Shown here: in pieces, positions 1 to 60,100 of the stretch
Position numbering within the stretch: position 1 is the first letter of the stretch
How the letters are laid out: every line of letters begins with the position of its first letter
The notes under the pieces: generated by a model
Databases searched by the model: none
Told to the model about the DNA's origin: nothing
Seen by the model: the letters and a program-made list of their open reading frames with translations, nothing else
Source: Macrostomum lignano
Lineage: Eukaryota
Length of the DNA: 64,000 nucleotides
Direction: 5' to 3'
Assembly (NCBI GenBank): GCA_002269645.1
Contig: NIVC01001839.1
Span: 1 to 64,000, forward strand
Made by a program: the position numbers and the translations under genes

Positions 1-1164
1 AGTGACTCTGAAGACTCTAAAACAAGGAGATGTCACTCTATGAATTAGCCTACTAAGTTAGTAGAAAGTTAAGCGCTAACACTCATGGAATCTGGAACGA
101 CTTCTTTTCTGACTCTTTATTCAACGGGTCTGACTTGCATTGGACGCCGAATATTCTAATATTAGTTTGATAATAATAATATGGTAGACTAGTACAAAAT
201 AACTACTTAAAACTATATTAATATTATTTAATTACATATAAATAACAGCGGAAGCAGACAGTTGAAAGACTAATTATTAATTATATTGCTAAAATTTAAT
301 ATTGTGTTAAATATAAGTGCGACAGAGACTGGGTGTTAACTAAAAAAATCTCAAATTTTAGGATTCAATTCCGACAGTGAAGATTGCGCTAGATCTGGTG
401 CAGACAGTGACTAACAGTTATAAGTTGCTTGCTATTTTGGGTGAGTATTCATTCAAACCTCGAAATTTAGAAATCCATGAAAAATAGGAAAATCCATGAA
501 AGGGAAATTTTGATTTCACGCAATTGAACAGAAAATAATATACTTCAATGAAATGCCAAAAATTGAATGAAACACACAATGCGCCGAAAATCTGCACAGA
601 CACAAGCGTGAATGTTGAGTTATAATATTATAAATGTTAATATTAACAAGTCTTGAAAAAATATAACTCAAGGTAAAAAATATAAATCATATATAAGATA
701 AGATAATACATATTGCCGCAAAGTTTTTCCATTCATCTATCGATGTTAAGATATAGAAATTCATTGCACACACAGAATAAATAGATACATACACGAGGTA
801 TGCCACTGGTTATCTATCTACACAGCAATTACTATAATCAGTAATAAACAACAAACTAATATTGCACAAACTACAGACTATATGGTAACAATAAGAATTA
901 CAAAAGAGATTGCTTATTGCATGCAATTATACAGTTTGATGTCAAAGTGTGACTAATCTCGCGTTGGGCACTGGGCAGAGTCAGAGTGCACAGACAGACT
1001 GAGAATGCAGTAATTTAGTAGATCCTGACAGGTCTCACAACAGGAAAAAAGCAGGTCGAAAACAGGAAAATATATTCGAAAAACTTTTGCTAAATTAGCA
1101 AGATCTGAGAGTGCTTCTAAAAACAATAACGGACTTATGAGAGAATGATACACGAACAATCATA

Positions 1165-1555
1165 TTCTGACAGTCTGACACACTGACAGATAGGCCAAAT
1201 CGGACAGTCTGACACACTGACAAGAATATCATGACATCAACCATTGACCATGATTATCTGTATCCATGTTTGAATACCATGACCTGAAATTTAAACACAC
1301 TGACAAGAAAAGCAGATCTGACAGTCTGACACACTGACAAGAAAGCAGTTTTGACAGTCTGACACACTGACAAGAATATAGGACCTGACAGTCTGACACA
1401 GAGACAATAATAGCAGATCTAACAGTCTGACACACTGACAAGAATATCGGACCTGACAGTCTGACACACTGACAAGAATATCGGACCTGACAGTATCGGA
1501 CCTGACAGTCTGACACACTGATAAAAATAGCATGACCTGAAAGTCCTGACTATTA
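1165..1555. repeat. Degenerate ~34-bp minisatellite directly 3' of the SNRK stop codon
   Basis: Unit GACAGTCTGACACACTGACAAGAATATCGGACCT, e.g. copies at 1455 and 1489. It explains the repetitive ORFs 1229..1516 and 1291..1563. Confidence 0.9.
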
Positions 1556-1564
1556 GCGCTCACA

Positions 1565-2218
1565 CTAGCTCACGCTGCAACACGAGACGCGAAATTTCGA
1601 GGAAGATTTTCGACCACCGCCGCCGCCGCCGCTGCCGTCACCGCCGCGACGCAACGACAACAGGTGCCGATGCCGTTGCTGATGCCGCCGCCGATGCTGC
1701 CGCGGTTGCAACTGCTGCTGACTGTCGTCGGCAACTTGATCGGCAGCTCCTACAATCGATAACGACGCAACGTCGGCGTTAGAGGTTGCCGTAGAGACCG
1801 GAGCGGTAGCAGCCGTTGCTATGGAAACAACAGCAGATGTTGGGGCGGGGACGGCAGCAGCTGCTGTGGATGCTGCGGCAGAAGAAGCAACAGCAGAAGC
1901 AGACGCGGCAGCAGCTTTTGCTCGAGCCAGTCTCAGATCGCGCATCAGCAATTCAACCCGATGCGAGGACAGCGAACGGAGGCTCGACGATGCTGCCGAC
2001 GAGTTCAACGAGAAGCTGCTGTCTCTGGCATTTGCTGACGAGCACTGGCGACCGTCCGATTGACGACGTCTGGATTGTCTGGCCGAGGACGAGGCGGACA
2101 CCGACTGGACTTGGCCGAATGCGCCGCCGGCGCTGACTGCAACGGTCGTGTTGTTTTTCGATGACTGAATTGTTTTTTTTGACAAATCTCTGCCATGTTC
2201 ACAACAGCCTACTTGTAG
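1565..2218 (-). CDS. SNRK: SNRK terminal exon (Ala/Ser/Gln-rich, ends SCCSVS*)
   Basis: Frame is open from the acceptor ...TTCTATTCACAG|CTA at 2218 to TAG at 1565-1567 (218 codons). An alternative phase-1 acceptor TTGCAG|TC at 2136 joins exon 3 directly in frame. The C-terminal SCC resembles the end of vertebrate SNRK (SCCHVI, recalled from memory). The 5' boundary is uncertain. Confidence 0.7.
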   Translation of the reverse strand, partial: LQVGCCEHGRDLSKKTIQSSKNNTTVAVSAGGAFGQVQSVSASSSARQSRRRQSDGRQCSSANARDSSFSLNSSAASSSLRSLSSHRVELLMRDLRLARAKAAAASASAVASSAAASTAAAAVPAPTSAVVSIATAATAPVSTATSNADVASLSIVGAADQVADDSQQQLQPRQHRRRHQQRHRHLLSLRRGGDGSGGGGGGRKSSSKFRVSCCSVS

Positions 2219-2271
2219 CTGTGAATAGAAAAATAAGTAGAGTATTCAGCGTACTATTTTTAGCAGCTTAC

Positions 2272-2300
2272 CTAGAAAATGCTATAGCGTCTTTTGACCA
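2272..2300 (-). CDS. SNRK: Putative 29-nt SNRK micro-exon encoding (V)VKRRYSIF*
   Basis: Acceptor CCTTCAG|TG at 2300 matches the phase-1 donor of exon 3. It ends in TAG followed by a strong donor GTAAGC (2271) and a 53-nt intron with CTGAAT, a pyrimidine tract and CAG. Confidence 0.45.
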
Positions 2301-2349
2301 CTGAAGGTTCGATATTGGTTTTTTTTATTCTGATCAATCAATTCAATAA

Positions 2350-2429
2350 ATGTGTCTGTTTGTCTGTCTGTCTGTTTTAGTGTTTTAGTGTCTGTCTGTC
2401 TACGAGTATCTGTCTGTGTCTGTCTGTCG

Positions 2430-2460
<31 letters not shown>

Positions 2461-2556
2461 CTCTATCTGTCTGTCTGTCTATCTGTCTGCCTGTCTGTCT
2501 GTCTGTCTGTATGTCTGTCTGTCTGTCTCTCTGTCCTCTATCTGTCTGTCTGTCTA

Positions 2557-2618
<62 letters not shown>
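2350..2618. repeat. (TCTG)n/(GACA)n microsatellite in SNRK intron 3
   Basis: Direct reading of the tetranucleotide run. Confidence 0.97.
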
Positions 2619-2646
2619 AATCCATCAATCCGTCTCCACCGCTCAC

Positions 2647-3380
2647 CAATAGGCGATTCAGTGTCGCCAACAGCTGCGGAAGCCTCCAAGGAGGCTGGCG
2701 GCTCGTCCAGTTCGCGAATGGGACAGCAGACAACGGCTGCCAGACTGCCGCCAATATTATGATCAGACGACACCGCGTCGGCAATGAAACCAGGATTGTC
2801 TGGCGATTCATAGCAACAGCCAAAGCCGCCGCAGGCGAGCTCGCCCAGGCTGTACTCGCTCAACGGTCGGCTTGGCGAATCCGACGATTCCGAGCTACTT
2901 CCGGCCCGACTTCCGGCGCTGGATTTCCTACCGACGATGGCCGCTGCTCCGCCGACGCCGGATCGCTTAGTGAGGTGGTGATGATGGTGTAACCGGAATG
3001 AGCCGCCACCAGAGCCTAGCAGAGCCAACTGATGCTGCTGCAATTGAAGGCTCAATTGATGCTGCTGCTGCTGTAGCTGAGCCTGCTGTTGCTGCTGCTG
3101 CTGCGAATTCTCGTCTAAACTGGCTGCCATTGCTTTTAGTAGCAGCTGAGGCGACGAGCGAACCGAGACTAACGATCGGTGCCGAGCGCTGCTGGACCTG
3201 GACCGGCCTTCAAGCACCACCGCGGCGGCTGGGGTGGCAGATCCGCCGCCAGAGAATGTTGCAGACATTGCTCCTGGCAGTGCAGCACCAGACTCTTCTG
3301 CTAGGGAAGCTAAGCCAATGTCTTCTTCTTCGATTATCATTGAGAATCGTCTGAGTTTCTCTTCGACGCTTAGGGATGCG
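2647..3380 (-). CDS. SNRK: SNRK exon 3 (low-complexity regulatory tail, polyQ/polyH)
   Basis: Acceptor CTGCAG|C at 3380 is phase 2, consistent with exon 2, giving C-ASLSVEEKLRRFSMIIEEED. Donor G|GTGAGC at 2646. Open frame throughout. Confidence 0.8.
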
Positions 3381-3409
3381 CTGCAGGTGGGTTGATGTGT
3401 TCGTATTAC

Positions 3410-3665
3410 ATCTGGGGATTCTATTGAGGATCTGGGATTTTATTGAAGATCTGGGGATTCTATTGAGGATCTGGGGATTTTATTGAGGATCTGGGAATTC
3501 TATTGAGGATCTGGGATTTTATTGAGGATCTGGGGATTCTATTGAGGATCTGGGGATTTTATTGAGGATCTGGGGATTCTATTGAGGATCTGGGGATTTT
3601 ATTGAGGATCTGGGGATTCTATTGAGGATCTGGGATTATTGAGGATCTGGGGAATCTATTGTTTA
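3410..3665. repeat. 20-bp minisatellite (GAGGATCTGGGGATTCTATT)n in SNRK intron 2
   Basis: About 12 tandem copies read directly. Confidence 0.95.
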
Positions 3666-3758
3666 AATCTGTTAAAGTGTTTAAATCCTAAAGATAAGGG
3701 TTTAAGATTAAGATTAAAACAATAAAGGTAATAATTAGTGACAATTCAAACAACTAAC

Positions 3759-4317
3759 CATGAGGACTGCCGACTACTGCCGCCTGCGCCCCCTGCTGCC
3801 GCCGCCGCCCCCGCAGTCTCCGGGATGCTCTCCAGCTCGGCAGACTGCCCCCTGCTGGGTGGCCGGCCCCCACCCGAGCTGCCAATAGACAGTCGGTGCC
3901 GTTCGAGTCGTGCCCGCCGCATGAGTCGCTCGGCTAGCAGGTAATAAGTAGCAGTCACGTGACTATAATCGTCTCTACCCAGAGCGGCTAAAATCTCGTC
4001 GCGAGTAGCTAAACCGCCTTCGACCATTTTGTCAACAACTTCCAATTGATCTTCGGGCGAAACCTCGTTGGCGCAGACTAGCGGAGTGCCGCAGGACAGC
4101 GTGGGCAGGCCGCAGAGCCATTCGTCCTCGAGGATGGAGTCAAGAGTAGGCCGTCGGGTTGGATCGCGTTGAAGCAGGCGCTCTATTAAACGTCGGCAGG
4201 GTAAAGAGACGTGACGAGGCACTCGGTAGCGAACGTCCATGATGCGGGCTAGAGTCTCTGAGTCGTTCTGCTCTTGAAACGGCAGCTTGCCAGTGGCTAG
4301 CATGAATAGGATGACAC
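3759..4317 (-). CDS. SNRK: SNRK exon 2 (kinase C-lobe and UBA domain)
   Basis: Acceptor CCAG|GT at 4317; translation GVILFMLATGKLPFQEQNDSETLARIMDVRY...DYSHVTATYYLLAER matches SNRK. Donor TG|GTTAGT at 3758. Confidence 0.93.
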
Positions 4318-4364
4318 CTGGCCGAGGTAATTTGGTGAGAAATTTATTGTAGTGTTTTTTATAA

Positions 4365-5875
4365 AGACTGGTTCCCTCAGGACCCATGTGTGATTGTCTG
4401 GTTCCTTCAGGACCAGTATGTGATTGTCTGGTTCCTTCAGGACCAGTGTGTGATTTTCTGGTTCCCTCAGGACCAGTGTGTGATTGTCTGGTTCCTTCAG
4501 GACCAGTATGTGATTGTCTGGTTCCTTCAGGACCAGTGTGTGATTTTCTGGTTCCTTCAGGATCAGTGTGTGATTGTCTGGTTCCTTCAGGATCAGTGTG
4601 TGATTGTCTGGTTCCCTCAGGACCCATGTGTGATTTTCTGGTTCCTTCAGGATCAGTGTGTGATTGTCTGGTTCCTTCAGGACCAGTGTGTGATTGTCTG
4701 GTTCCTTCAGGACCAGTGTGTGATTGTCTGGTTCCCTCAGGACCCATGTGTGATTTTCTGGTTCCTTCAGGATCAGTGTGTGATTGTCTGGTTCCTTCAG
4801 GACCCATGTGTGATTTTCTGGTTCCTTCAGGACCCATGTGTGATTGTCTGGTTCCTCAGGACCCATGTGTGATTTTCTGGTTCCTTCAGGACCCATGTGT
4901 GATTGTCTGGTTCCTTCAGGACCAGTGTGCGATTTTCTGGTTCCTTCAGTACCAGTGTGTGATTGTCTGGTTCCCTCAGGACCCATGTGTGATTGTCTGG
5001 TTCCCATCAGGACCCATGTGTGATTTTCTGGTTCCTTCAGGACCAGTGTGTGATTGTCTGGTTCCTTCAGGACCAGTGTGTGATTGTCTGGTTCCTTCAG
5101 GACCAGTGTGTGATTGTCTGGTTCCCTCAGGACCCATGTGTGATTTTCTGGTTCCTTCAGGATCAGTGTGTGATTGTCTGGTTCCTTCAGGACCCATGTG
5201 TGATTTTCTGGTTCCTTCAGGACCCATGTGTGATTGTCTGGTTCCTTCAGGACCCATGTGTGATTTTCTGGTTCCTTCAGGACCCATGTGTGATTGTCTG
5301 GTTCCTTCAGGACCAGTGTGCGATTTTCTGGTTCCTTCAGTACCAGTGTGTGATTGTCTGGTTCCCTCAGGACCCATGTGTGATTGTCTGGTTCCCATCA
5401 GGACCCATGTGTGATTTTCTGGTTCCTTCAGGACCAGTGTGTGATTGTCTGGTTCCTTCAGGACCAGTGTGTGATTGTCTGGTTCCTTCAGGATCAGTGT
5501 GTGATTGTCTGGTTCCCTCAGGACCCATGTGTGATTTTCTGGTTCCTTCAGGATCAGTGTGTGATTGTCTGGTTCCCATCAGGACCCATGTGTGATTTTC
5601 TGGTTCCTTCAGGACCCATGTGTGATTTTCTGGTTCCTTCAGGACCCATGTGTGATTTTCTGGTTCCTTCAGGACCCATGTGTGATTGTCTGGTTCCTTC
5701 AGGACCAGTGTGCGATTTTCTGGTTCCTTCAGTACCAGTGTGTGATTGTCTGGTTCCCTCAGGACCCATGTGTGATTGTCTGGTTCCTTCAGGACCAGTG
5801 TGTGATTGTCTGGTTCCCCCAGGACCCATGTGTGATTGTCTGGTTCCTTCAGGACCTCAAATGTGATTATCTATA
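4365..5875. repeat. 30-bp minisatellite (GTTCCTTCAGGACCAGTGTGTGATTGTCTG)n in SNRK intron 1
   Basis: About 50 copies. Variant markers (GTACCAGT, TGCGATTT) recur at ~391-bp spacing. Confidence 0.97.
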
Positions 5876-6054
5876 GGATTATCTTTAGGAACCAATCGTG
5901 GTTGTTTAGTTGCCTCAGATTTGATAATTATCTAAGTTGCTTCAGGCGTGATTGATTGCTTTATTCAGGTGCATAGCATTATTTTCATTTGGCCCATCCT
6001 GGTAACCCTTCTTGCAGCCTTAATAGTACTACTGATAGCAGAATGGAGACCCAC

Positions 6055-6697
6055 CAAGCGACCAGACGTCAACCTTAGTAGCATCGTACGAATCGCCGAG
6101 AAGAATCTCAGGCGCGGAATAGGCCAAACTGCCGCAAGATGTTTCCAAGAATTTACCAGGCGTAAACACGTTGGAGAAGCCGAAATCGGTCAGTTTAACT
6201 AGGCCTTGCTTCTCAAACACGACGCAGTTTTCTAATTTTAAATCTCGGTGACAAACGTGCAATTTGTGACAATAGGCAATAGCTGTGACAATCTGATGAA
6301 AGAAACTCTTAGCCATTGATTCTTTAAGGCCGCGTTCGTGCTTCAAGATGTAATCGTACAGATCGCCTCCATCGCCTAATTCCAGGATTAGATACAGTCG
6401 ATTTGCAGTGTCAATCACTTCGTAAAGCCTTACAACATTGGGATGCTGGACTAGTTTCATGCACATCACCTCTTGGAATAGGTGTTCCCTACTAACAGCG
6501 TCTAATTTGCTTTTGTCAATTACTTTCACGGCTACCTGTTCGCCAGTAAATGTGTGTTTAGCAAGTTTAACAACTGCAAAATGGCCTCGACCGATGGTAT
6601 GCTCAAGATCATATTGACCGGCTATGGTGGAATCAATTGAAAAGTGTCGCTGTACATGCTGCTGTTTTTGCAGCTGGTGCTGCTGCTGCTGTGCCAT
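6055..6697 (-). CDS. SNRK: SNRK exon 1 (kinase N-lobe to subdomain IX), AMPK/SNF1-related Ser/Thr kinase
   Basis: [17 protein letters not shown], [14 protein letters not shown], [20 protein letters not shown] and [16 protein letters not shown] are characteristic of SNRK. First in-frame ATG at 6697; phase-1 donor G|GTGGGT at 6054. An upstream coding exon cannot be excluded (in-frame TAG acceptor at 6827). Confidence 0.95.
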
Positions 6698-7873
6698 TGA
6701 TGGAATTTGCCAACTGTTAATTGCCAGACAACGTTCATATGGTTTGGCGTGCAAATGGAATAGGATGGAGTTCACAAATTGAATCGAATATTCAAGTGCT
6801 GATGCCAATTTAATGATGACAGTGGTCTAGAAGAATGCCCAATATTGTAGCATATCAACAGCTGAAAGAAATAATTCATCTCAAGTTCAATAATCTTAAA
6901 ATGAAAACCAATGACTAAATATAAATCTTATTAAGGTGCACAAACAACATTAAGAGTACAAGTTTAGCTTTCAGCAGTCTCATAAAACTTTCAGTTTGTT
7001 TACAATTTTTGGTTTGCTAATATACAATACAGTTTTTTGTCTACTACAAAATATGAAATAAAATATTAGTAATTAATATAAATATAAATATATGTGTATA
7101 TATATTACAAGTATATATCTATATATCTTTAGTCATTTAGTTTTTATTATTTTATACTTGAGATACTGATAAAATAGCAAACTCATTATGTAACAATAGT
7201 GATAGCTAATTATGTTAGAAGTATGAGTATATCTTCCATATCCATCCATCCAATCCATCCACCATCCACCAATGCATCCACTATCCACTTATCAAGTGCA
7301 ATAATCCACTATCCACCAAAAAAATATACCAAAAATGGTCTGCCTGTGTGTGTGTGTGTGTGTGTGTGTGATCAATTTAAGCAAAAATGGCTCAACTGAT
7401 TTTCTTCAAACTTGCAATGCTCAATCAGAAATTTTTCCTTGACAGTACATGTATTGTGGCTAAGAAGTTGCTTGATGCTAAAGGGATTAAATATTTGAAA
7501 AACATGCTTTTTTGCAAAGGTCAAGCAGCTCTTTTCAATTTAAAATGCATTCTAAGAATGCTGAATAAAAAACTGACTGGATGAATTTTGATTCTAAAAT
7601 AGATTGCATCAAAATAGGCTTTTTATTTACCAATTGTGTATTGGCAGAATTTTGACACTGAATTGAATTGCATCACAGCATTGAAAATGCAATGTGGAAG
7701 CATACTACAATACTTGATTTATATTGTATAACCATATTGTTAACTTTCATAGAGACTAGTACTGAATTGCCTAAGAAATTTATTATGTCATAAGTGCTTC
7801 TTGTGACTTTTACTCTAACTGACTTGGTGTGAGTGTTTAATTATAAGTACTACAAATTCACTTATAACTTTGA

Positions 7874-7935
7874 TGACAGCTAGCCTAGAGGTGAACAGGC
7901 TGGGCTGCTAATGTAGTAACCGGAGTTCAAACTTT
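7874..7935 (+). other. Degenerate tRNA-like (SINE-head-like) remnant
   Basis: A-box-like TAGCCTAGAGG, loop-like CTGCTAA and B-box-like GGAGTTCAAAC at tRNA-like spacing. The stems do not pair, so it is not a functional tRNA. Confidence 0.3.
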
Positions 7936-8004
7936 AGTAATGTAATAAAAGTAGTATAATTTTTTATTGAAGTCTTTTATTAAAGGACTAATTAAAAAGA
8001 CCTA

Positions 8005-8330
8005 GATTACTGCGCTTGATAAACCAAGGATTATTGGACTCAATAAACCAAGGATTACTGCACTTGATAAACCAAGGATTACTGCACTTAATAGAGCAAG
8101 GATTATTGCACTAGCTTAGAAATGGACTATGCACTAGCTAAGACATCAATTTTGCACTTGATAAGTTAAGGATTATTGCATTAGATAATAAAATGATTAT
8201 TGCACTAGCTAAAAAGCAGATTATTGTGCTGGAATAAAAAGAGATTATTGTGCTAGCTAAGACATGGATTATTGCACAACCTGAGAAAGAAATTATTGCA
8301 TTAGTGGAGGAAATATTGTCACTAACTACT
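8005..8330. repeat. Degenerate 24-bp minisatellite (AAACCAAGGATTACTGCACTTGAT)n
   Basis: Copies at 8021, 8045 and 8069, decaying 3'. Confidence 0.85.
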
Positions 8331-8339
8331 TCTATCTGG

Positions 8340-8790
8340 TGAATGCTTGCTATCTAAGGATGCTTACTATTGGGCGATGCTTGCTCTCAACGGGGGTACT
8401 TGCTATTTGGGAGAGGGGTATACTGGCTACACATGTATCTACATGTATGGGATTTTTCTATCTAGGGCTGCTTGCTTTTTAGAGATTATTGCTATCTACA
8501 GGATGCTTGTTATCTGGGTAGATGCTTGCTATTTATATGACACTTGATATCTAGGGGATGCTTGCTATCTGGGTGATGGTTGCTATTTGGAGGATGCTTG
8601 CTATCTGAGAGAATGCTTGTTTTCTGGGGGATAGTTGCTATCTGAGGGGATCGTTGCTATCTGGGGGATGGTTGCTATCTGAGGGGATGCTTGCTATCTG
8701 GGGGATGCTTGCTATCTAGGGGGATGCTTGCTATCTGGGGGGATGCTTGCTATCTGGGGGATGCTTGCTATCTGGGGGGATACTTGCCCC
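8340..8790. repeat. ~19-bp minisatellite (GGATGCTTGCTATCTGGGG)n
   Basis: Copies at 8704, 8723 and 8742, more degenerate 5'. Confidence 0.88.
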
Positions 8791-11700
8791 CCCCCTGGGG
8801 GATCTAAGGGATGTTTTCTATTTAGGGAGAATGTTTGTTATCTTTGTGAAAACTTTATTTTATTGTCTTTCTGTTAAGTTTAGGAAAAAAAGAAAGAGAT
8901 TAATAGTAAACATCTTTGTCCATGATAATTGTACTCAAATAAGGTGATTTATAAAACTGAAGAACTGGTTCTTAAGAAATAAGCTTTTTTAATTGTTTTT
9001 CATGAATAATGTTTGCTCCTTGCTTATTGCACACCCTGAGGGGATACTAAATTGCTAGTCCTAGATACTAATTCGTTAGTTTATACTTAATAAACTTTGG
9101 AATAAGAACAGCAATATTTAACATCATGAAAAGACCAAGGCTCCATTAAAATTAAATTATTTATCAAATATATTGTTTGGAAGATAGTTAAAACTAAAAA
9201 TTTTTTTATTGTATGTTTAAATCTTATATAGCATATATTATGTTTCTTTAAAATATTGTTTTATCAATCAATTGATAAAAATCAATGAAAGTACAGTGTT
9301 CGGTGGTGGGGCCAGGTGGGCAAGAGGATGGGGGTGGGAGGGTTGGGGCTTTTGGGGGCTTTTGTATGGGCTTTTGGGGGCAAAGTGGTGAGCGGTAGAG
9401 GGGGTAAGTGACCGCAGAGTTGAGGTTTGGTGGGTGGTTTGAAATTACAGGGGAATCCATTGTGACTAGAAAGAAAAAGACTGAGGAATTTAATTAGGCA
9501 TTGGATTTGAAAGTTGAAATGGACATAGAATGAAGAAGAAAATGTGAACGCACAAATTTTAAATATTTCAATAAACAGATGAATGAATCCAATATGCCTC
9601 AATCAATCAATCAAGTATAAATCAACAAGGTGCACTATATTCCAGTTCAATCACAAGTTCAATCACAGTTTATCATAATCCAGGATTCCAGAAACAATCA
9701 AACGAAGCGGACAGACTGGGCAAATGCGCGAAATGATCAAAACTTGCAAGCAAGAGAATATAGCTAACTAACTTAGCTAACAATAGATTGAAGAGTTAAC
9801 ATTCTGCCTTAGATTGTTGCGTGCGCGCACATTTTTATCAGTTAGTGGGCTACCCCCATGCTTTTTATTTTGATACCAACAAGCTAAATTTAAATGGGGG
9901 ATGATCCTAGACAGTATACAAGTGACCTTGTCATTGGCCAATAGAGAGCTGCAAAAAACCAACCCCCATAATACAAGCCAATAGATACATAAAATGGATG
10001 CTAAAATTGGCGAGCATGGTATATCCTAGGGTCTCTGCTTTTTAGGAACAAAATTACATAAACATTCTTTTACAATAACTCTATGACTTATATTGCCTAT
10101 TTATAGACTGAATAAAATTAAAGTATAAAAAATGTGCATTGAAGCATCATTTTTGCCATTAAAATGTAGGTTAAACTGTTCAGAACCTATGGTCTAGACC
10201 ATAATAAGGATTGGGAAAGTAGCCTTTTTAAAGAAAATTCTAATGTATATTATAAAATGGTCTAATTTTACATTGACTTAGGGTAAATAATACAATTTGG
10301 CATAAAGAAAAAGCAGTGTACATTGCATTGTATTTTCCCATCTTGTGCAATGCTAAGTAGGACAATTATTAATTAAATGACAGAGCATTTGGAAACCATT
10401 TAGATATTTGGATTTGGATTCAGAATTTTTTTGTATATTCTGATTTGGTTTTAGAAATTTGCAAAAATCTACATTTGGTCTACCACTAGCCCCCCCCCCT
10501 AATAACAATTGCCTAAATTATATTGCCAACCCACCTAAACTTTTGCGGATCCAGGTATACTTGTCAAATTTTTATTCATCAACTGAGTTGACGAGTTTAC
10601 TATATTTCTAGGTAAGCCCAGGTAAATTTGTCAACTTAAGTTTAGTATAAAAAAAGTATAGCGACATAATTTGTTAAACTAGTATGCCATTGAAATTGAG
10701 TTAAAGCTACTGTAAAATAATTATCTATATATTTACTTTTACTTTTATGATTTTTACAGCATTTGTTTAGCTTTGATTTGCTGCCCAATATTTTTGCTTT
10801 TACTATTTACAATTTGTTATAGATTTGTTAACCTAAATTTTTCTTATGGAAATGCTGTGCTTTTTTTGCTGGGTTTTTTTATATTTTTATTTATCTTTGT
10901 GAAATGTATGATGTACAAAACCTAATTAATCAAGAATCAAAATTTCAATAATCATAAATTGAAATTGAATATATTTGAATATGTATTTGAATATAATATT
11001 TAAGTATAAAATCTTAAATCTGCACTTTCTAATAGTGGACTTTGTGGGTGCTCAGATCATTGGCACAAAGTGGAGCTTACTTAATTGAATACTTGTTTAG
11101 CGAATCATGTAATCACAAATGTAATCACGAATCAAACAACATGCAGTTGACAAATTTTACCAGTTGACAAATTTACTAGTTGACGAGTCTGCTAGCACCC
11201 AAGTTTTGCATATTACCAAAAAACTATGCTAGGATTTTTCTGAAAGTTCCGGAGCTAATATGTTGCATATAAATACACAAAGCCAGAAGCAAATATTTCC
11301 AACCATTTAGTTTCCTTCTAACTTTCTTTTTTTCGTGTATGTAAACTCATATGCAATTTATTCACGAATACAAGTAGCTTAAATGCACAAAGTGTAAAAT
11401 GTAAGGAGCAATCGAAATTGTAGGCACACAAAATGTAAACTCATATGCAATTTATTCACAAATACAAGTAGCTTAAAGGTTAGTTAGGTTTCGTAGAAAA
11501 TGAAGAAAAACAAAATGTATCAATATAAATAAGAAAACATACTTAAAACTTGCTTATACTAATTTATTTTAATTCCCTACATAAAAAATACTAAATAAGT
11601 GAACCAAAATAAACATAAATAAAAAAGTTGCTTCGTCTGCTAAAATTCTTTGGCAGACAAAAAGGCGGCAGACAAAATGACCGCAGACCTCTTCAACAAC

Positions 11701-27638: not shown

Positions 27639-29206
27639 AAGGGCTGGCCGCCCACTACCGCGAGGTGCTCAGCGCGCCCGCTCCAACTGCGCCTCTTCTG
27701 CCAATCCCAGACTTCGCTCCAGCCCAGCCAGGCGCCTTCAACACCGGCCCCATCACTGCAGGCGAGGTTGACCGAGCACTGAGGACCATGCGAGTTGATG
27801 CCGCCGCTGGGGTGGACGCCATCCCTCCCAGGGTCCTGAAGCTGCCCGAACGCACCCCAACCATCACAAGCCTGCTAAACAAACACTGCAGCCCAGCCTT
27901 GGAGGCAACGAGACCGCCTCAGCTCCTCAGCAATGGCGCACCTCCAAGATTGTCTCCATCCCGAAGAAAGGCGCCTCCACCAGCTTGGACAACCAGCGGG
28001 GCATCGCGCTGGAGTGCACAACGCCGAAGCTGCTGAACGCGACTCTGCGCAACCCGCTGCTGCTGAGCCTCCAAAGCGGCTTCCGCCCGGGGCAGGTCCA
28101 CCACCGAGCAGGTTGCCACCATCCGCTCTGTCATCGAGGCCTGCAAGACCCGCCAGCGCTCCGTGTCAATCATCTTCGTCGACTCTCGCAAGGCGTTTGA
28201 CTCGGTGTCCAGGCCTGCAATTGCGGGGCTTTTATCGCATTATGACGTGCCTGCTGCGCTGGTGAGTGCCGTGGTGGACCTCTACCGCGTCTCCAGGGCT
28301 TTTGTCATGTCGAGCGACGGCCCCACAGAAGAGTTCGGCACCAGCTCAGGCGTCCTTCAGGGCGACACGCTGGCTCCTCTGCTCTTCCTCTTGGTTGTGG
28401 ACTACGTGCTTCGTCGGTTCCTCCGCGAGGATGACAGCTACTTGCTGGTCCCACGCCGAAGCTCCAGACACCCTGATGTTTCGCTTCCCGCTCTCGCGTA
28501 TGCTGACGACATCGCGCTGCTCTGCCGCGACCCAGCTGTGGCCCAGCGCGCTCTCACAAGGCTTTGCGACGAGGATGCCCGTGTTGGGCTGCTGGTGAAC
28601 GCTCGCAAGACGAAGGCGCTGCACGTGGGCACGAATACCGCCCCAGCTCTTACGCTGCCCAATGGAGACCGCATCGCGGTGTGCGAGGTTTTCCGGTACT
28701 ATCTATCCTCCTCAGGAACGTTTTTAATTTAGCTGCCAGAGACGACCTGAAGGTGCGCCTGTTCCGCGCGGCCGTCGAGCCGATCCTGCTGTACGGCATG
28801 GAGGCTGTGCCGCTGACCGAGACGCGAGAGCGAAATCTGGACGCGCTCTGCCGATCGCTGCTGGGCGTGCACTACCCGGATCGCCTGCCGACCAACGCTC
28901 TGATGGCCCGCGCTGGGACGCCGCCCCTGAGCGATCGGCAGAGCTCAGCAGCACCCTGAGCCAGATGCTTCTGGGCCACTGCCTACGGACCCTGGGTCGC
29001 GGCGCGCCCGTCCCGCTGGCCCTGGCCATGCTGCACCGGCCGACCGAGCAATTCCGCCGCGGTCAGGCCCGCACTGCCACTCTAACGGACTGCCTCATCG
29101 CTGACTTGCAGGCGTTTGACCTGACCCCTCAGGCTGCTGCTGCCTGCCCCTCCGGCCTGTTCTGCGAACGCGTGCGCGCAAGGGGCCTCCCCTCTGCGTC
29201 TTAAAA
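27639..29206 (+). mobile_element. 5'-truncated non-LTR retrotransposon, family B (RT; RTE-like), with 18-bp TSD
   Basis: [67 protein letters not shown] and LLGHCLR; frameshifted. TAAATATATTTATTAACA at 27621-27638 and 29207-29224. Confidence 0.95.
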
Positions 29207-29210
29207 TAAA

Positions 29211-29456
29211 TATATTTATTAACATATATTTATTAACATATATTTATTAACATATATTTATTAACATATATTTATTAACATATATTTATTAACATATATT
29301 TATTAACATATATTTATTAACATATATTTATTAACATATATTTATTAACATATATTTATTAACATATATTTATTAACATATATTTATTAACATATATTTA
29401 TTAACATATATTTATTAACATATATTTATTAACATATATTTATTAACATATATTTA
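29211..29456. repeat. 14-bp minisatellite (TATATTTATTAACA)n
   Basis: 17 perfect units plus a partial one. Confidence 0.98.
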
Positions 29457-30109
29457 ATCTTGCCAAATAATTTGCTCGAAACTGCAAAGTGTAGAAAAAG
29501 TTGCAAGTCGCCACTCGTAAACAGAAATTTCTCGCTGGCTAACATTATTTTTAAAAAAGAGCAACTTCGATGCTATTTGACTGCTATCTAATCTCCAACT
29601 TCTAGATCTGGCAACCTTCGCCTTTGACTGAACGAAAATAATATAAAATGAAAAACCCGGTCAAGAAATGACGGAGAGAAGCAATTTGCGAAGAATAAAT
29701 TCGACGCGTTCCCAGGAAAGGATGGAAAGAGGCACGCCTGAGCTATCAGCTATCATCAGAGTGGTGGGGGCTTTTGCCTGTCTTCAACAGGAAGCCCCGG
29801 AATCCCTCGCTATCCCACAATTTCCTGACCAGCACCTGATGTTACAAGTGCTGAAGAAATAAATGAGGCAAGGAATTGTTAATTAAAATAAGTGATGGTT
29901 TTTACCGCTAAATTAAATAACTTGAAGGCTTGATTGATGATGGGCTTACCGGGAGTCTGGATAGACAGCCGAATTTCTATATGCTGCATCTTATCTATAA
30001 AACGAAAAAATAATTTCTATACGGGACAGCGCCGCCTTAGCGGTAAACTGCATTACACAATACTTAACAATTGCAAATATAATTGCAAATAATTCAAATT
30101 AGTTGAATA

Positions 30110-30735
30110 AGGCACCAAAATGAGTGCCTGTGGCGCCAAAATGAGTTTAATGCAGCGCCAAACTGAGTACCTGCAGCGCCAAAATGAGTGCCTGCGGCGC
30201 CGAGATGAGTGGCACCGGCGCTAAAATGAGTGCCTGCACTGCCTGCGGCGCCAAAATGAGTACCTGCGGCGCCAAAATGAGTTGAATGCGGCGCCAAAAT
30301 GAGTTGAATGCGGCGCCAAAATGAGTTGAATGCAGCGCCAAACTGAGTGTCTGTGGCGCCAAAATGAGTGTCTGTGGCGCCAAAATGAGTGTCTGTGGCG
30401 CCAAAATGAGTTTAATGCAGCGCCAAACTGAGTACCTGCAGCGCCAAAATGAGTGCCTGCGGCGCCGAGATGAGTGGCACCGGCGCTAAAATGAGTGCCT
30501 GCACTGCCTGCGGCGCCAAAATGAGTACCTGCGGCGCCAAAATGAGTTGAATGCGGCGCCAAAATGAGTTGAATGCGGCGCCAAAATGAGTTGAATGCAG
30601 CGCCAAACTGAGTGTCTGTGGCGCCAAAATGAGTGTCTGTGGCGCCAAAATGAGTGTCTGTGGCGCCAAAATGAGTGCCTGTGGCGCCAAAATGAGTCCC
30701 AGCGACGCCAAAATGAGTGCCAGCGACGCCAAAAA
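30110..30735. repeat. 21-bp minisatellite (GGCGCCAAAATGAGTGTCTGT)n with a 265-bp higher-order duplication; left arm only
   Basis: Units at 30376 and 30397; variant block TTTAATGCAG at 30146 and 30411. Absent from the right arm. Confidence 0.95.
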
Positions 30736-31849
30736 TCAGTAATATTAACACCGATTCTTTGTTCTTTGATTTTTCGTTTATGAATATTGATGCCTTTGTC
30801 CCTCCCACCGACATAATAATTCATAGATCATAAGATCCAGCACAGGTTTTCTCATTCCACACAAAATTTAAGAATGGTTGTTGGATAGCCACGTGACGGT
30901 GTACATTGGGGAGCACCTGTGGAATAATAGATAAAATTAATTGCCATTATATTGTATGAGAAAAAATTATAGCAGTCAGTAAATTATTTTTTATTACGCC
31001 TATAGGCCTTAATAGTGGACTTATCATCATAAATCTAAAATAAAATTTAACTTCAATAGTAACACAACAGCCGTAAAACAGCCATTGTTTTTATATTAGA
31101 TTCCATGTCTATTAGCATCGACCGTGACCAGCTATTTATGCGACCAAAAATCGCATTAGCGGATTTGTTTGATCTTGGCCGCCAAGGGTCCATCTATTTA
31201 GCCAATCTAATATGCTATTGAGCAATGCAAAGTAGGTATCTACGTTTCTAGATAAGAGTGTTTTAAAATTGCTGGAAAAACAGACGTAATTCTGGGTCAA
31301 TAAAACATGCTTTTAAAATCATATCTGCGCCCAGAAGATTCGCGCTATTGAGTGTTGGGACAATCGGCCCGATCAATATCTGTGAATTTCGTCGAAAAAA
31401 CATGTAATCGATCGACTGAGAGAAATACTCGCTTATCTCTGCATGCAATGCAGTAAAACAAATTCGGTTTTGTCGATATTTCAATATTCGGAATAGCAAC
31501 AGATTATATATTTATAATATTTTTAATACGAACAAAAAATTCAATTATAACTAGAAATAAATATTCAAAGTGAGAATAAATCGTTTGATTTGATTAGTCT
31601 GACTGTCTGTCCGGTCCGCTCTCAATTTTTTGACAGGATCGAGAGACTGACCGAGCCGCCCAGACATCATGCAAATCGATCAGGATACATCAGAACCGAT
31701 TCAGCTTGCTCCTAAATGCTTTTTAATCGACTTCGGAGCTCTGAGGCTGTTGTTTGAGGAATACTTTTTCTCATTTGGATAAAATGCAAGGCATGTTCAA
31801 CAAAAGTACGCTAAGAGAGATAGGAGAGAAAAAGCCAATAAGGGCATTG

Positions 31850-32247
<398 letters not shown>

Positions 32248-33608
32248 TTGGAGGGCATCAAAAATGTTGCATGCAAGCAGCTGAAAAGAGATCGCTGAAG
32301 CATGCAACAGCAATCTTCTAAGAACCGCGGGGAGAAAAGTTCGGGTTAAGCCAGTTGGTTGCAGAAGAGCCGGAAAGTGGCAGATGTGATGCAGCGGGAG
32401 CCAGAGGGAGAGAGGCACCTGAGCAGCTGAACTCCGCAATCATCTCCATACAGCTGATTTCGTCAAGTCATGGAGGAAGAGAGTTCAGTTCCGCTTGATG
32501 AGAGCTGGGAAATTCCGCCTCAACGCTATTTGGACGGGCGATGATGGGGTTTGAGCTGGGGCAGCCATGCAGATGGCAGCGCATCATCACTCAGTCAGGC
32601 AGTCCAAAGGCGTTATCTCAGCCTCTTGAACGCCGTGACAGGGAGAGAGAGACTTAGTTAATTCCGATAAGCCGTCTGAACATTGATTTCTATATAAATG
32701 ATTTAGCTACATGTATAAGTATAAAGGCAGCTATAGTTGTTAATTATTCGCATCGATTCCTGCATGGCAGTTTTATCACCTCGCTAAAGCCGGTAGATAA
32801 ACGGATTGATATTATGTATATTTTCTTCACTGTGCGAATAAATCAAGATGGAAGGCCTCTTATATTCTGGCAATACCTTAATCTGCTAGTTTTATCAATA
32901 GATTAATCAACAAAAGAATTGATCAAATAACCGAATGCGAAGAGGAAAAAGAGAAACTTTGATAAGAACTCGAGGATGGCCGCCCAAGTACGTCTCATGG
33001 CTTGCTGCTTATATTCTCTGAGGAATATGCTCGCTAGTATTTATTCATGGACTGTGGGAAACGCAAATTAAAATTTTCATTTAGTCACTTTCTGCATAGG
33101 TTAGACTACATAATACATGTAAATGTGTGCGGCTGTCTGCTAACAGAGGACGGTTAATCATGGACGGCTAAAGTACATGTACGATCGTAGAAAGGACTCC
33201 GCGAAAAGGTTTTCTTCTTTGAACCTTCGGAGCTTTTGAATTTTAAATGAAAGAATTGTACTTTGTTTATATAAAAAATTATCGCAAATTAAAACGAAAA
33301 TTTCTTGCAACCGTCTAAAAACGAAGTGCATTAAATTCAAGATGGAAGACCGCGAGTATGGTAAGAAGTGTGCGAACGCAAGTGCGGGCCATGCTACTTA
33401 ACAAGTAGCTTTAAAATTTTTTTTGCTCAAAAAATAAAAAAATATGATGAATGCTTATTAATTCATAGTATATTTATTACAAAATCATAATACTGGTGAA
33501 GAAATTGATCTGATTTTTTAAGCACAGTCTCTGAAATCGGACTCATTCAGAATAATTAAAAGGCTTTCTTAGAAAGACGAATAAACATCAAGTCGTCAGA
33601 ATGATCAA

Positions 33609-36600
33609 TCAATTGGTCCATTCTTCCTTCCAGTCGTCTTCAGTCGATTGCCAACTGTCCCGAAGCTGTGAAAATCGATTTTTTTACTTTCTGTTTTACT
33701 TGACTTCAGGGTCTGGGGATTCGGATTTCTGGGTCTGAGGATTGGGATTTCTGGGTCTGAGGATTGAGATTTCTGGGTCAGAGGATTGGGATTTCAGGAT
33801 CTGAGAATCGGAACTTCAGGATCTGAAGGATCGCGGGACTTCATGGTCTAAGGATCGGGACTTCAGGATCTGAGGATCGGGACTTCGGGATCTGAAGATC
33901 GGGACTTCAGGTTCTGAGGATTGGTGAGACTTCAGGATCTGAGGATCGGGACTTCGGGATCTGAAGATCGGGACTTCAGGGTCTGAGGATCGGGACTTCA
34001 GGGTTTGAGGATTGGTGGGACTTCAGGATCTGAGGATCGGGACTTCAGGATCTAAGGATCGGGACTTCAAGTTCTGAGGATCGGGACTTCGGGATCTGAA
34101 GATCGGGACTTCAGGGTCTGAGGATCGGGACTTAAGGATCTAAGGATTGGGACTTCAGGATCTGAGGATCGGGACTCCAGGATCTGAGGATCGGGACTAC
34201 ATGGTCTAAGGATCGGGACTTCAGGATCTAAGGATCGAGACTTCAGGGTTTGAGGATTGCTGGGACTTGAGGATCTAAGGATTGAGACTTAAGGATCTAA
34301 GGATCGGGACTTCAGGATCTGAGAATCGGGACTTCGGGATCTGAAGATCGGGACTACAGGGTCTGAGGATTGGTGAGACTTCAGGATCTGAGGATCGGGA
34401 CTTCAGGATCTAAGGATCGGGACTTCAAGTTCTGAGGATCGGGACTTCGGGATCTGAAGATCGGGACTTCAGGGTCTGAGGATTGGTGAGACTTCAGGAT
34501 CTGAGGATCGGGACTTAAGGATCTAAGGATTGGGACTTCAGGATCTAAGGATCGGGACTTCAGGATCTGAGAATCGGGACTTCGGGATCTGAAGATCGGG
34601 ACTACAGGGTCTGAGGATTGGTGAGACTTCAGGATCTGAGAATCGGGACTTCGGGATCTGAAGATCGGGACTTCAGGGTCTGAGGATTGGTGAGACTTGA
34701 GGATCTGAGGATCGGGACTTCGGGATCTGAAGATCGGGACTTCAGGGTCTGAGGATCGGGACTTCAGGGTTTGAGGATCGGGACTTCAGGGTTTGAGGAT
34801 TGGTGGGACTTCAGGATCTAAGGATCGGGACTTCAAGTTCAGAGGATCGGGACTTCGGGATCTGAAGATCGGGACTTCAGGGTCTGAGGATTGGTGAGAC
34901 TTCAGGATCTGAGGATCGGGACTTAAGGATCTAAGGATTGGGACTTCAGGATCTGAGGATCGGGACTCCAGGATCTGAGGATCGGGACTTCAGGATCTGA
35001 GGATTGGGACTTCAGGATCTGAGGATCGGGACTCCAGGATCTGAGGATCGGGACTCCAGGATCTGAGGATCGGGACTTCAGGATCTGAGGATTGGGACTT
35101 CAGGATCTCAGGATCGAGACTTCAGGGTTTGAGGATTGGTGGGACTTCAGGATCTAAGGATCGGGACTTCAAGTTCTGAGGATCGGGACTTCGGGATCTG
35201 AAGATCGGGACTTCAGGGTCTGAGGATTGGTGAGACTTCAGGATCTGAGGATCGGGACTCCAGGATCTGAGGATCGGGACTTCAGGATCTGAGGATTGGG
35301 ACTTCAGGATCTCAGGATCGAGACTTCAGGGTTTGAGGATTGGTGGGACTTCAGGATCTGAGGATCGGGACTTAAGGATCTAAGGATTGGGACTTCAGGA
35401 TCTGAGGATCGGGACTCCAGGATCTGAGGATCGGGACTTCAGGATCTGAGGATTGGGACTTCAGGATCTCAGGATCGAGACTTCAGGGTTTGAGGATTGG
35501 TGGGACTTCAGGATCTAAGGATCGGGACTTCAGGTTCTGAGGATCGGGACTTCGGGATCTGAAGATTGGGACTTCAGGGTCTGAGGATTGGTGAGACTTC
35601 AGGATCTGAGGATCGGGACTTCAGGATCTGAGGATTTGGACTTCAGGATTCAGAGAATTTAAAACTTCAGGATCAGGACGATTTATGACTGCAGAGTGAC
35701 TCTCTCAAGTCAAGGATAGAAGTTTCGAGACTTGAATTATTAGTTTTAAATAAACAAGCTTTTAAATAAACAAAAAAACAAAAAGATCACTCACAAACAG
35801 ATTCCCCTGCAGCTGCACTCCAACCACCTGAAGCAGCAGCTGCCGCAGCTGCCAGCCTCCCAGAGCATTGATGGGGCCGCTCTCCAGTCGCAATCGGTCG
35901 CGCACAAGTCGCAGTGCAGTCGTCTTTGCAGACCCTCCACTCGAGCTGGCGGTCGCGGCAGTTGAGGTCAGACGATCGTGAAGACGCTGGGAAAAATGTT
36001 TGGAACAAGTTTTTTTAATTGGCTGTCACTGTCGACAGTCCAGGATATCCAATTTCAATATAGATATCCCATTCTCTGTAGTCAAAATATTCCCGATTCT
36101 CTCTCCCTACCCTAGATATTCCACTCTCCCTACCCTAGATATTCCACTATCCCTACCCTAGACATCCCCACTATCCCTACCATAGACACCCAACTCTCCC
36201 TACCCTAGATATTCCACTCTCCCTACCCTAGATATTCCACTCTCCCTACCCTAGACATCCCACTCTCCCTACCCTAGACATCCCCACTATCCCTACCATA
36301 GACACCCCACTCTCCCTACCCTAGATATTCCACTCTCCCTACCCTAGATATTCCACTCTCCCTACCCTAGACATCCCACTCTCCCTACCCTAGATATTCC
36401 ACTCTCCCTACCCTAGATATTCCACTCTCCCTACCCTAGACATCCCACTCTCCCTACCCTAGATATTCCACTCTCCCTACCCTAGATATTCCACTCTCCC
36501 TACCCTAGACATCCCACTCTCCCTACCCTAGATATTCCACTCTCCCTACCCTAGATATTCCACTCTCCCTACCCTAGACATCCCACTCTCCCTACCCTAG

Positions 36601-38600: not shown

Positions 38601-39352
38601 TATCTCCAACAGTAGTTATGTGATTCTAGAAAAAAAGGTATTGCAATAATTTTAGTTTTAATTTTTGGATAATTTTTTATTTGTGATCTTATTTTTATCT
38701 TATTAGCTATTTATTAACATATGTTAAGTACAGAATAAGATGCAAAGTAAATATTCTCTAATTATTATAGTTTACTATAATATAAATTTTCAGTGGTTAG
38801 TCAGGTTGTCTTTTATTTTAAAAAATATTTTCTGAAAAAACTTATATCACGTCAACACAGATTTACTAAAATAGTTATTTTTTAAATATGTTTCTGAATG
38901 TACTAATATTATGATAGCTACATTTAAATTTTTTATTTTGACTGATAAAAGCAAGGTTTCTATTTTTCGTAATTGTAAACTTGTGAATATGAAATGTATT
39001 CCTTACTACAAAAATAGAGCACATTACTTACAACTACTTTTGGTCGAAGTATAAACACTTTCTAGCTAATCGACTTACGCGGGAAGAAAAAGTAATTTAT
39101 AATTTATAAATTTATAACGCTGTATTGTGCCACTCTAAGCTTTATCCGTCCTTCACGTTTCGTAGAGGCTTCTACGAAAACAGTAAATTTGATTTAATGC
39201 CAACGTCATACATGTATAACAATTTACTATTATTTTCGTTTTATTTTTTATACCGATTGACACTATATTAATACTAATAATTAATGCCTATTTTGTTATG
39301 CTTATGCCCCAATATATTAGATCATATATTAGTATTAGCTTCGTATATTTGT

Positions 39353-56955: not shown

Positions 56956-60100
<3,145 letters not shown>

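What the first reader, a model, noticed from the sequence alone, without database searches (positions are those of the whole stretch)
1565..2300. SNRK: in-frame UAG at an exon end may gate a 217-aa extension ending in a CaaX-like motif (candidate readthrough or isoform switch)
Seen in sequence: exon 3 (phase-1 donor at 2646) joins a 29-nt exon (2300-2272) reading GTG GTC AAA AGA CGC TAT AGC ATT TTC TAG. A 53-nt intron with strong signals follows (GTAAGC ... CTGAAT ... TTTTTCTATTCACAG). After splicing, the TAG is followed in frame by CTA CAA GTA..., open for 217 codons to SCCSVS*. In the other two phases the 3' exon stops within a few codons, so if this intron is spliced the long frame is reachable only through the UAG. 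The micro-exon carries an RRxS motif like RRFS in exon 3. Established: stop codons followed by C/CUA are leaky contexts in known viral and metazoan readthrough (strongest for UGA); an intron right after a stop avoids the 50-nt NMD rule; C-x-x-S termini are CaaX farnesylation substrates. Inference: a short 654-aa and a long, possibly prenylated 872-aa kinase, toggled by readthrough. A simpler alternative is skipping to the in-frame acceptor at 2136 (835 aa), which would still give isoforms with and without the CaaX-like end.
Basis: partly seen in the sequence, partly recalled or inferred. Interest (0 to 1): 0.75.

Follow-up and report, generated by a model that had tools for sequence, protein, structure and literature searches.

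The report
Ordinary intron in flatworm SNRK gene
The in-frame UAG sits in a splice-site look-alike inside an ordinary intron of a Macrostomum lignano SNRK kinase gene, and the "extension" behind it is the kinase's normal, conserved tail, which the RNA-based gene model reaches by plain splicing.

Summary
The window is Macrostomum lignano DNA. The gene is an annotated SNRK kinase on the minus strand (PAA63467.1, 835 aa).

- a 29-nt segment (2300-2272) ending in TAG
- a GTAAGC donor
- a 53-nt GT..AG interval
- a frame open from 2218 to SCCSVS*
- products of 654, 872 and 835 aa

The headline interpretation is not supported:
- The deposited, RNA-seq-derived model joins exon 3 (donor 2646) directly to the acceptor at 2136. 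Two other near-identical gene copies and two independent UniProt models use the same junction.
- G+C jumps from about 0.3-0.45 to about 0.75 exactly at 2136.
- The paralogue has no intron here at all.
- No protein in the databases contains the micro-exon or the 27 codons after it.

The 190-aa tail is the canonical SNRK C-terminus. 81 of 124 homologues end in CC-x-x-X, and the schistosome proteins read here end in CCSVS like this gene.

A minor isoform that includes the micro-exon and lacks the tail cannot be excluded without reads, because strong 53-nt GT..AG pairs are rare in this window. Readthrough is neither needed nor indicated. Interest is low.

The parts
6055..6697 (-). SNRK coding exon 1. 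ATG at 6697; N-terminal part of the kinase domain; phase-1 donor GTGGGT.
   Evidence: The product equals P0001. Pfam Pkinase covers residues 29-282.
3759..4317 (-). SNRK coding exon 2: end of the kinase domain and a UBA-like stretch. Donor GTTAGT.
   Evidence: PF23312 UBA_SIK3 gives a weak hit at residues 308-345.
2647..3380 (-). SNRK coding exon 3. Low-complexity linker carrying the conserved KLRRFSMI and CCPIRE motifs. It ends with G as the first base of a split codon.
   Evidence: The motifs are shared with flatworm orthologues.
2137..2646 (-). Intron 3 of the deposited model: 510 nt, GTGAGC...TTGCAG. It holds a (GACA)n microsatellite at 2353-2618 and, in its 3' part, the candidate micro-exon and the 53-nt interval.
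   Evidence: The junction TESPI|VSAGG is in P0001, P0121, P0122, P0002 and P0003. Microsatellite. The non-repeat 3' part (2350-2137) has G+C of 0.26-0.40 by segment.
2272..2300 (-). Candidate 29-nt micro-exon, VVKRRYSIF then TAG. Most likely unused intronic sequence.
   Evidence: Present as described. Absent from every protein model. The exact 654-aa product is not in the 15-billion-protein collection. G+C is 0.38.
2219..2271 (-). Candidate 53-nt intron: GTAAGC ... CTGAAT ... TTTTTCTATTCACAG.
   Evidence: Such signal pairs are rare in the window. No transcript-based model uses it.
2137..2218 (-). 27 codons, open in the tail's frame, lying upstream of the real acceptor. Composition is intron-like.
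   Evidence: G+C 0.40 and GC3 0.33, against 0.62 and 0.58 in the exon that follows. An open frame of this length has P about 0.12-0.21. No homologue aligns to it.
1565..2136 (-). Last coding exon: 190 codons plus the TAG stop at 1567-1565. It carries the SSFSLxS...SLRSLS...LMRDL block and the terminal KFRVSCCSVS (a CC-a-a-X end).
   Evidence: The deposited CDS ends here. The blocks are conserved in the paralogue and in cestode and trematode SNRKs. 81 of 124 homologues end CCxxX.

Best explanation
This is an ordinary four-exon SNRK (SNF-related kinase) gene of Macrostomum lignano.
- Exon 3 (donor at 2646) is spliced directly to the acceptor TTGCAG| at 2137/2136, removing a 510-nt repeat-bearing intron. 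The product is the 835-aa kinase.
- The last 190 residues of that kinase are the family's normal C-terminal tail, ending in a conserved CC-a-a-X motif (CCSVS).
- The 29-nt "micro-exon" ending in TAG and the 53-nt GT..AG interval are intronic sequence that happens to carry good splice-like signals.
- The frame stays open for 27 codons (36 in the genome) upstream of the true acceptor by chance.
- No stop codon lies between kinase and tail in the main mRNA, so nothing needs to be read through.

Shown: the junction in the deposited models, tail conservation, the composition step, and absence of the intron in the paralogue.
Inferred: the micro-exon is not used at a meaningful level.
For: - My model through 2136 is 100% identical over 100% of its length to GenBank PAA63467.1 (BOX15_Mlig002124g1).
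- The same junction is in two further gene copies (PAA58673.1, PAA55874.1) and in the UniProt models A0A1I8H1X3 and A0A1I8GTL7.
- That GenBank annotation was built from RNA-seq and de novo transcripts (STAR, StringTie, TACO, TransDecoder; PMC5730564). The junction is therefore transcript-derived.
- G+C rises from 0.27-0.47 to 0.73-0.77 exactly at 2136, and GC3 is 0.33 before it against 0.58 after it.
- All three accepted acceptors of this gene are C/A-rich CAG sites without a T-tract. M. lignano cis-splice motifs are simply GT[G/A]AG and CAG (PMC8629364). The weak-looking 2136 site is therefore normal for this species.
- The paralogue (PAA50780.1) encodes residues 314-822 in one uninterrupted exon, with no intron or micro-exon at the homologous place. 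It aligns better to the 835-aa model than to the 872-aa model (score 102 against 80).
- The tail's blocks and its CCxxS end are conserved across flatworms. CCxxX ends 81 of 124 SNRK homologues.
- No protein matching the micro-exon or the 27 codons was found. An HMMER scan of 1.84 billion representatives aligns only from the residue encoded at 2136 onward.
- The exact 654-aa, 651-aa and intron-retention products are not in the collection.
Against: - I could not look at reads. The annotation pipeline dropped isoforms below 0.75 of the major one, so a minor isoform would be invisible.
- The GTAAGC...polypyrimidine-CAG pair 53 nt apart is closer to the general metazoan consensus than the gene's accepted sites. 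Such pairs are rare in this window, about 6 per 128 kb.
- The three gene copies are identical here, so they give no test of selection and are not independent for multi-mapping reads.
Confidence: 0.82

Rival explanations
1. The 29-nt segment is a real but minor alternative exon. Including it and removing the 53-nt intron places UAG on the last exon junction. The result is a 654-aa SNRK without the conserved tail and its CC-a-a-X end. Isoforms with and without the tail would then arise by splicing alone, with no readthrough.
For: - All signals are legal for M. lignano: GTAAG donor and CAG acceptors.
- Strong short GT..AG pairs are rare by chance, about 0.02 expected per 510 nt.
- A stop on the last junction would escape the 50-nt NMD rule (established knowledge).
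- The annotation's isoform filter would hide a minor form.
Against: - No model or database protein carries it.
- The paralogue has no counterpart.
- At 29 nt it is not a multiple of three, and I see no UGC just upstream of its acceptor. That motif marks known neuronal micro-exons, by my recollection; this was judged by eye on the sequence.
- Its composition is intron-like.
- At least one equally good signal pair elsewhere in the window lies in sequence with no open frame.
Confidence: 0.12
2. The micro-exon is included, and the UAG followed by CUA is read through at some rate. That would give both a 654-aa kinase and an 872-aa kinase carrying the lipid-anchor motif.
For: The frame is open after the UAG. 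Stop codons followed by CUA are leaky contexts in known cases, best documented for UGA-CUAG (established knowledge).
Against: - This needs rival 1 to be true first.
- The conserved tail is already made by ordinary splicing.
- The 27 codons that only readthrough would translate have intron-like composition and no homologue.
- UAG is also this gene's own terminator at 1567-1565.
- The context is UAG-CUA-C. It matches neither UGA-CUAG nor UAG-CAR-YYA.
- My one full-text search for 'Macrostomum' with 'stop codon readthrough' returned no paper.
Confidence: 0.015
3. The strong acceptor at 2219 competes directly with 2136 for the exon 3 donor. That would give a minor mRNA whose frame ends after ATSRLL*, a 651-aa protein without the tail.
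For: 2219 has the best pyrimidine tract in the intron, 10 of 12, and a CTGAAT branch-like site upstream.
Against: It is not in any model, and the exact product is not in the collection. M. lignano acceptors show no requirement for a T-tract.
Confidence: 0.05

Closest known systems
SNRK (SNF-related serine/threonine kinase, AMPK-related kinase family) of other animals
   Same: - A kinase domain followed by a UBA-like stretch.
- The conserved RRFSMI motif.
- In flatworms, the CxPIRE and SxFSLxSxAxSLR blocks.
- The C-terminal CC-a-a-X end. The four schistosome-family proteins I read end in CCSVS, identical to this gene; cestodes end CC[RHQ]IS, molluscs CCS[VL]V, insects CCSLC and fish CC[QH]VI.
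   Different: - The linker is shorter and rich in Gln, Ala and Ser.
- M. lignano has two diverged paralogues, each in several near-identical copies.
- This copy has an intron (2646-2137) that the paralogue lacks.
Programmed stop-codon readthrough extensions in animals (for example the UGA-CUAG class, which adds C-terminal targeting signals)
   Same: On paper only: a stop followed by CUA, with an open frame ending in a targeting-type motif.
   Different: - Here the stop is not in the annotated mRNA at all.
- The downstream frame is the gene's normal last exon, reached by splicing.
- The stop is UAG, not UGA.
- The codons just after the stop show no coding signature.
CaaX-box proteins with an adjacent upstream cysteine (H-Ras type ends; LKB1/STK11 among kinases)
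   Same: Cys at position -4, an aliphatic residue at -2, Ser at the end, and a second Cys next to it. The motif is conserved across phyla.
   Different: Lipidation of SNRK was not tested here. I found no paper on it in the held library. The terminal residue varies (S, V, C, I), so which enzyme acts, if any, is uncertain.

Membership tests
SNRK (AMPK-related kinase) | Ser/Thr protein kinase domain at the N-terminus | tested here: met
   Pfam PF00069 at E = 2.3e-70, residues 29-282.
SNRK (AMPK-related kinase) | Closest relatives are proteins named SNRK, with similarity extending beyond the kinase domain | tested here: met
   The top 120 hits are almost all named SNRK. The RRFSMI, CxPIRE and FSLxS blocks and the CCxxX end are shared.
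SNRK (AMPK-related kinase) | UBA-like domain after the kinase domain | tested here: inconclusive
   PF23312 UBA_SIK3 scores 16.6 bits against a cut-off of 27, at residues 308-345.
Programmed stop-codon readthrough | The stop codon is present in the mature mRNA | tested here: not met
   The RNA-seq-derived CDS joins 2647 to 2136 and skips the TAG. A minor isoform could not be tested without reads.
Programmed stop-codon readthrough | Coding-type conservation immediately after the stop | tested here: not met
   The 27 codons at 2218-2137 have no match in 1.84 billion representatives or in the paralogue. GC3 is 0.33 against 0.58 in the following exon.
Programmed stop-codon readthrough | A known leaky context (UGA-CUAG or UAG-CAR-YYA) | tested here: inconclusive
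   The context would be UUC-UAG-CUA-CAA. CUA follows the stop, but the stop is UAG and the next base is C.
Programmed stop-codon readthrough | Ribosome footprints or peptides beyond the stop | not testable with these tools
CaaX prenylation substrate | Cys at -4 from the C-terminus, with a2 aliphatic and X suited to a prenyltransferase | tested here: met
   The protein ends in C-S-V-S preceded by a further Cys. The motif class is conserved in 81 of 124 homologues.
CaaX prenylation substrate | The protein is actually prenylated | not testable with these tools
   This needs an experiment. I found no literature on animal SNRK.
Alternative (poison or terminal) micro-exon | Usable splice signals on both sides | tested here: met
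   CAG| at 2301 and |GTAAGC at 2271. These fit the M. lignano motifs.
Alternative (poison or terminal) micro-exon | Transcript evidence for inclusion, or conservation in relatives | tested here: not met
   It is in no model. The paralogue has no intron at this place. The near-identical copies are uninformative. Reads were not available.

The most novel reading that the evidence does not exclude
A minor M. lignano SNRK transcript includes the 29-nt exon and removes the 53-nt intron, giving a 654-aa kinase without its conserved CC-a-a-X tail. On that transcript a small fraction of ribosomes read through UAG-CUA and restore the tail. I put splicing-only use of the micro-exon, without readthrough, at about 0.1.
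Probability: 0.015. Interest if true: 0.6.

Novelty: already known. Interest (0 to 1): 0.08.

Why it matters
As it stands this matters little. The locus is an annotated gene with ordinary splicing, and the apparent UAG "gate" comes from choosing a splice path through intronic look-alike signals.

It is a useful caution. In M. lignano the true acceptors are weak-looking CAG sites, so textbook-strong cryptic sites inside introns can mislead a reading based on sequence alone.

One by-product may be worth a kinase biologist's attention. The SNRK tail ends in a CC-a-a-X motif conserved from flatworms to fish. This suggests lipid anchoring of a kinase, and I found no description of it in the papers searched.

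Tried and rejected
- Two protein-database searches with the C-terminal region, including the micro-exon and the 27 codons, were meant to fish out transcript-derived fragments. They gave nothing usable. One search was swamped by low-complexity words and returned only P0003. One search returned no hit at all, not even the protein identical to most of the query. This reflects a limit of the word index and is not evidence of absence.
- Exact look-ups of the 654-aa, 651-aa and intron-retention (766 aa) products and of two ORF versions of the tail found nothing on record.
- An HMMER scan of 1.84 billion representatives with the genomic ORF 2245-1568 found only the M. lignano protein, from the 2136 boundary onward, plus three low-complexity hits.
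- I asked whether the 3' part of intron 3 is a repeat or a transposed gene piece. It has no other copy in the window or in the paralogue locus. The whole genome could not be searched.
- I tried to collect real short M. lignano introns from the neighbouring GCN1 gene in L001, to calibrate the 53-nt candidate. Its introns there are long and repeat-filled, so no calibration set resulted.
- Spacing between the conserved PIRE and FSL blocks does not discriminate. It ranges from 52 to 102 residues in flatworms, which brackets both models at 60 and 97.
- A recursive-splice-site reading of TTTTCTAG|GTAAGC was considered and dropped. The motif fits, but the intron is only 510 nt and the outcome would be the same mRNA.
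- Literature searches for prenylation of animal SNRK returned only plant SnRK and LKB1 papers.

Full report
**What the window is.** A spliced model built from the minus strand matches GenBank PAA63467.1, [quoted passage not shown] (UniRef name: SNF-related serine/threonine-protein kinase). The match is 100% identity over 100% of 835 residues. The locus returned for that protein is the reverse complement of window 1-9697, at the start of contig NIVC01001839.1 of assembly GCA_002269645.1. The organism is therefore the free-living flatworm M. lignano, and the gene is already annotated.

**Check of the observation.** The gene runs on the minus strand:
- Exon 1 is 6697-6055, exon 2 is 4317-3759 and exon 3 is 3380-2647.
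- Exon 3 ends with a single G of a split codon, followed by GTGAGC.
- CCTTCAG| precedes a 29-nt segment (2300-2272). In that phase it reads VVKRRYSIF and then TAG, directly followed by GTAAGC.
- 53 nt later, TTTTTCTATTCACAG| ends at 2219.
- From 2218 the frame is open to ...KFRVSCCSVS and a TAG at 1567-1565. The other two frames close at codons 3 and 7.
- The TAG is identical in three separately assembled contigs, with 301 nt at 100% identity.

The description is accurate. The 53-nt interval therefore does not delimit the open frame.

**Which splice is used.** The deposited 835-aa protein reads ...GDTESPI|VSAGGAFGQ..., which joins 2647 directly to 2136.
- The same junction appears in two further near-identical gene copies, PAA58673.1 and PAA55874.1.
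- It also appears in two UniProt models, A0A1I8H1X3 and A0A1I8GTL7.
- The GenBank annotation of this assembly is not ab initio. It came from RNA-seq mapped with STAR, assembled with StringTie and TACO, merged with a mapped de novo transcriptome, with ORFs called by TransDecoder (PMC5730564). The junction is therefore transcript-derived.
- One caveat applies. TACO was run with an isoform fraction of 0.75, so minor isoforms would have been dropped. Reads also multi-map among the identical copies.

**Independent sequence evidence for 2136 as the exon start.**
- G+C in 30-nt windows is 0.27-0.47 from 2350 to 2141 and jumps to 0.73-0.77 from 2150 on.
- The 82 nt between 2218 and 2137 have GC3 of 0.33, against 0.58 for the exon that follows and 0.57-0.61 for exons 2 and 3.
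- The acceptor at 2136 (CGACCGTTGCAG|) looks weak by textbook standards. So do the other accepted acceptors of this gene (CTCGGCCAG| and CCACCTGCAG|).
- A genome-wide study found only GT[G/A]AG and CAG enriched at M. lignano cis-splice sites (PMC8629364).
- A 27-codon open stretch in sequence of this composition is expected 12-21% of the time.

**The paralogue.** M. lignano has a second SNRK (PAA50780.1, 822 aa, 66% identical over the region BLASTP aligned, about half the query). In its locus, residues 314-822 are encoded by one uninterrupted exon, so there is no intron, micro-exon or stop at the homologous place. Aligned across the junction region, it fits the 835-aa model better than the 872-aa readthrough model (score 102 against 80). 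The 37 extra residues align only to gaps.

**What the "extension" is.** The last exon carries two blocks conserved in flatworm SNRKs.
- The first is SSFSLNSSAASSSLRSLSSHRVELLMRDL. The paralogue has SSFSLSSLASSLRSLSSQRVAVDLMRDL, cestodes have SNFSLASLASSLRDSRHMVDVLRG and schistosomes have SNFSLSSLATSLRDSRYMIDIIRG.
- The second is the very end, KFRVSCCSVS. The paralogue has KFRIRCCTIS, Schistosoma has ARLACCSVS and Echinococcus has STSCCRIS.
- Across all proteins returned, 81 of 124 end in CC-x-x-X: CCSLC, CCQVI, CCSLV, CCSVS, CCSVV and others. Many of the rest appear truncated or come from lineages with a different end.

The tail is thus the canonical SNRK C-terminus and not an optional extension. 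A design in which such a conserved tail could be reached only through UAG readthrough would express it rarely, which is implausible.

**Searches for any trace of the micro-exon.**
- The exact 654-aa product, the 651-aa product of the 2219 acceptor and the intron-retention product are all absent from the 15-billion-protein collection.
- An exhaustive HMMER scan of 1.84 billion representatives with the genomic ORF 2245-1568 matched the M. lignano protein only over query residues 33-89. The identity there starts at the residue encoded at 2136. The other three hits were low-complexity matches.
- Two word-indexed searches with the C-terminal region failed for technical reasons and carry no weight.
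- Pfam finds nothing in the tail ORF.

**What still speaks for the micro-exon.** A GTRAGY donor with a pyrimidine-rich YAG acceptor 40-80 nt downstream occurs only about six times in both strands of the window. That gives roughly 0.02 expected in a 510-nt intron. At least one of the other pairs sits in sequence with no open frame and so looks like chance. Even so, I cannot exclude that the 29-nt segment is used in a minor transcript without reads.
- If it is used, the simplest consequence is a 654-aa kinase lacking its tail. I put this at about 0.12.
- Readthrough on top of that I put at about 0.015. The context, UAG-CUA-C, is not one of the well-documented leaky ones, and UAG is also this gene's own terminator.

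**Comparison with known systems.** The gene is a member of the SNRK family by kinase domain, shared motifs and tail. It does not meet the tests for a readthrough gene. The stop is not in the annotated mRNA, the codons after it show no coding signature, and the context is only partly leaky. The C-terminal CSVS, with an adjacent Cys, fits the CaaX definition and is conserved. Lipidation of animal SNRK was not tested here, and I found no paper on it.

**Verdict.** What is there is already known and ordinary, so interest is low. The decisive test is a junction count in existing RNA-seq.

Noticed in passing
window 1565-1582 (-), and the C-termini of proteins P0001-P0124: SNRK proteins from flatworms, molluscs, arthropods and fish end in a conserved CC-a-a-X motif, in 81 of 124 homologues. 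The ends include CCSVS, CC[RHQ]IS, CCS[LV]V, CCSLC and CC[QH]VI. This looks like a prenylation box with an adjacent cysteine that could be palmitoylated. I found no paper on lipidation of animal SNRK in the library searched.
   Followed up: partly
window about 27,900-41,900 and about 47,300-63,700: A large palindromic (inverted) duplication centred near 44.6 kb. It includes a 5,793-nt pair of arms at 100% identity (32643-38435 and 50764-56556) and further arms at 97-99%. It could be a real inverted duplication or a long-read assembly artefact.
   Followed up: partly
window 56955-59910: A (CTGC)n microsatellite of about 740 units, 3 kb long. It produces spurious ORFs of up to 1,116 codons. Sequence at 31843-32364 in the opposite palindrome arm matches this array at many offsets at 87-89% and looks like a much shorter copy, so the two arms appear to differ here.
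   Followed up: partly
window 4368-5856, 3410-3661, 2353-2618 and 1295-1544: Every intron of the SNRK gene and its 3' flank carries a tandem array: a 30-nt unit x 50 in intron 1, a 20-nt unit x 13 in intron 2, (GACA)n x 67 in intron 3, and a 34-nt unit x 6 downstream. The intron 1 array is open in several frames and yields long artefactual ORFs.
   Followed up: no
window 1573-1518 (-): The last two codons, GTG AGC (Val-Ser of CCSVS), form a GTGAGC donor-like hexamer, with a TTTTTATCAG acceptor-like site 56 nt downstream. If used, it would replace the end of the CaaX box. This is probably chance.
   Followed up: no
L001 10001-14087 (paralogue locus) compared with window 1565-6697: The two M. 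lignano SNRK paralogues differ in intron positions. The paralogue has two introns and lacks both the intron after ...SSRQSS and the one at 2646-2137. Its second intron lies about 100 residues earlier, after ...LERDDY. Each paralogue is present as three or more near-identical copies in the assembly.
   Followed up: partly
tool behaviour: The word-indexed protein search did not return PAA63467.1 for queries that are largely identical to it, although it had returned it for the full-length query. Negative results from that tool for low-complexity or short queries should not be trusted.
   Followed up: no
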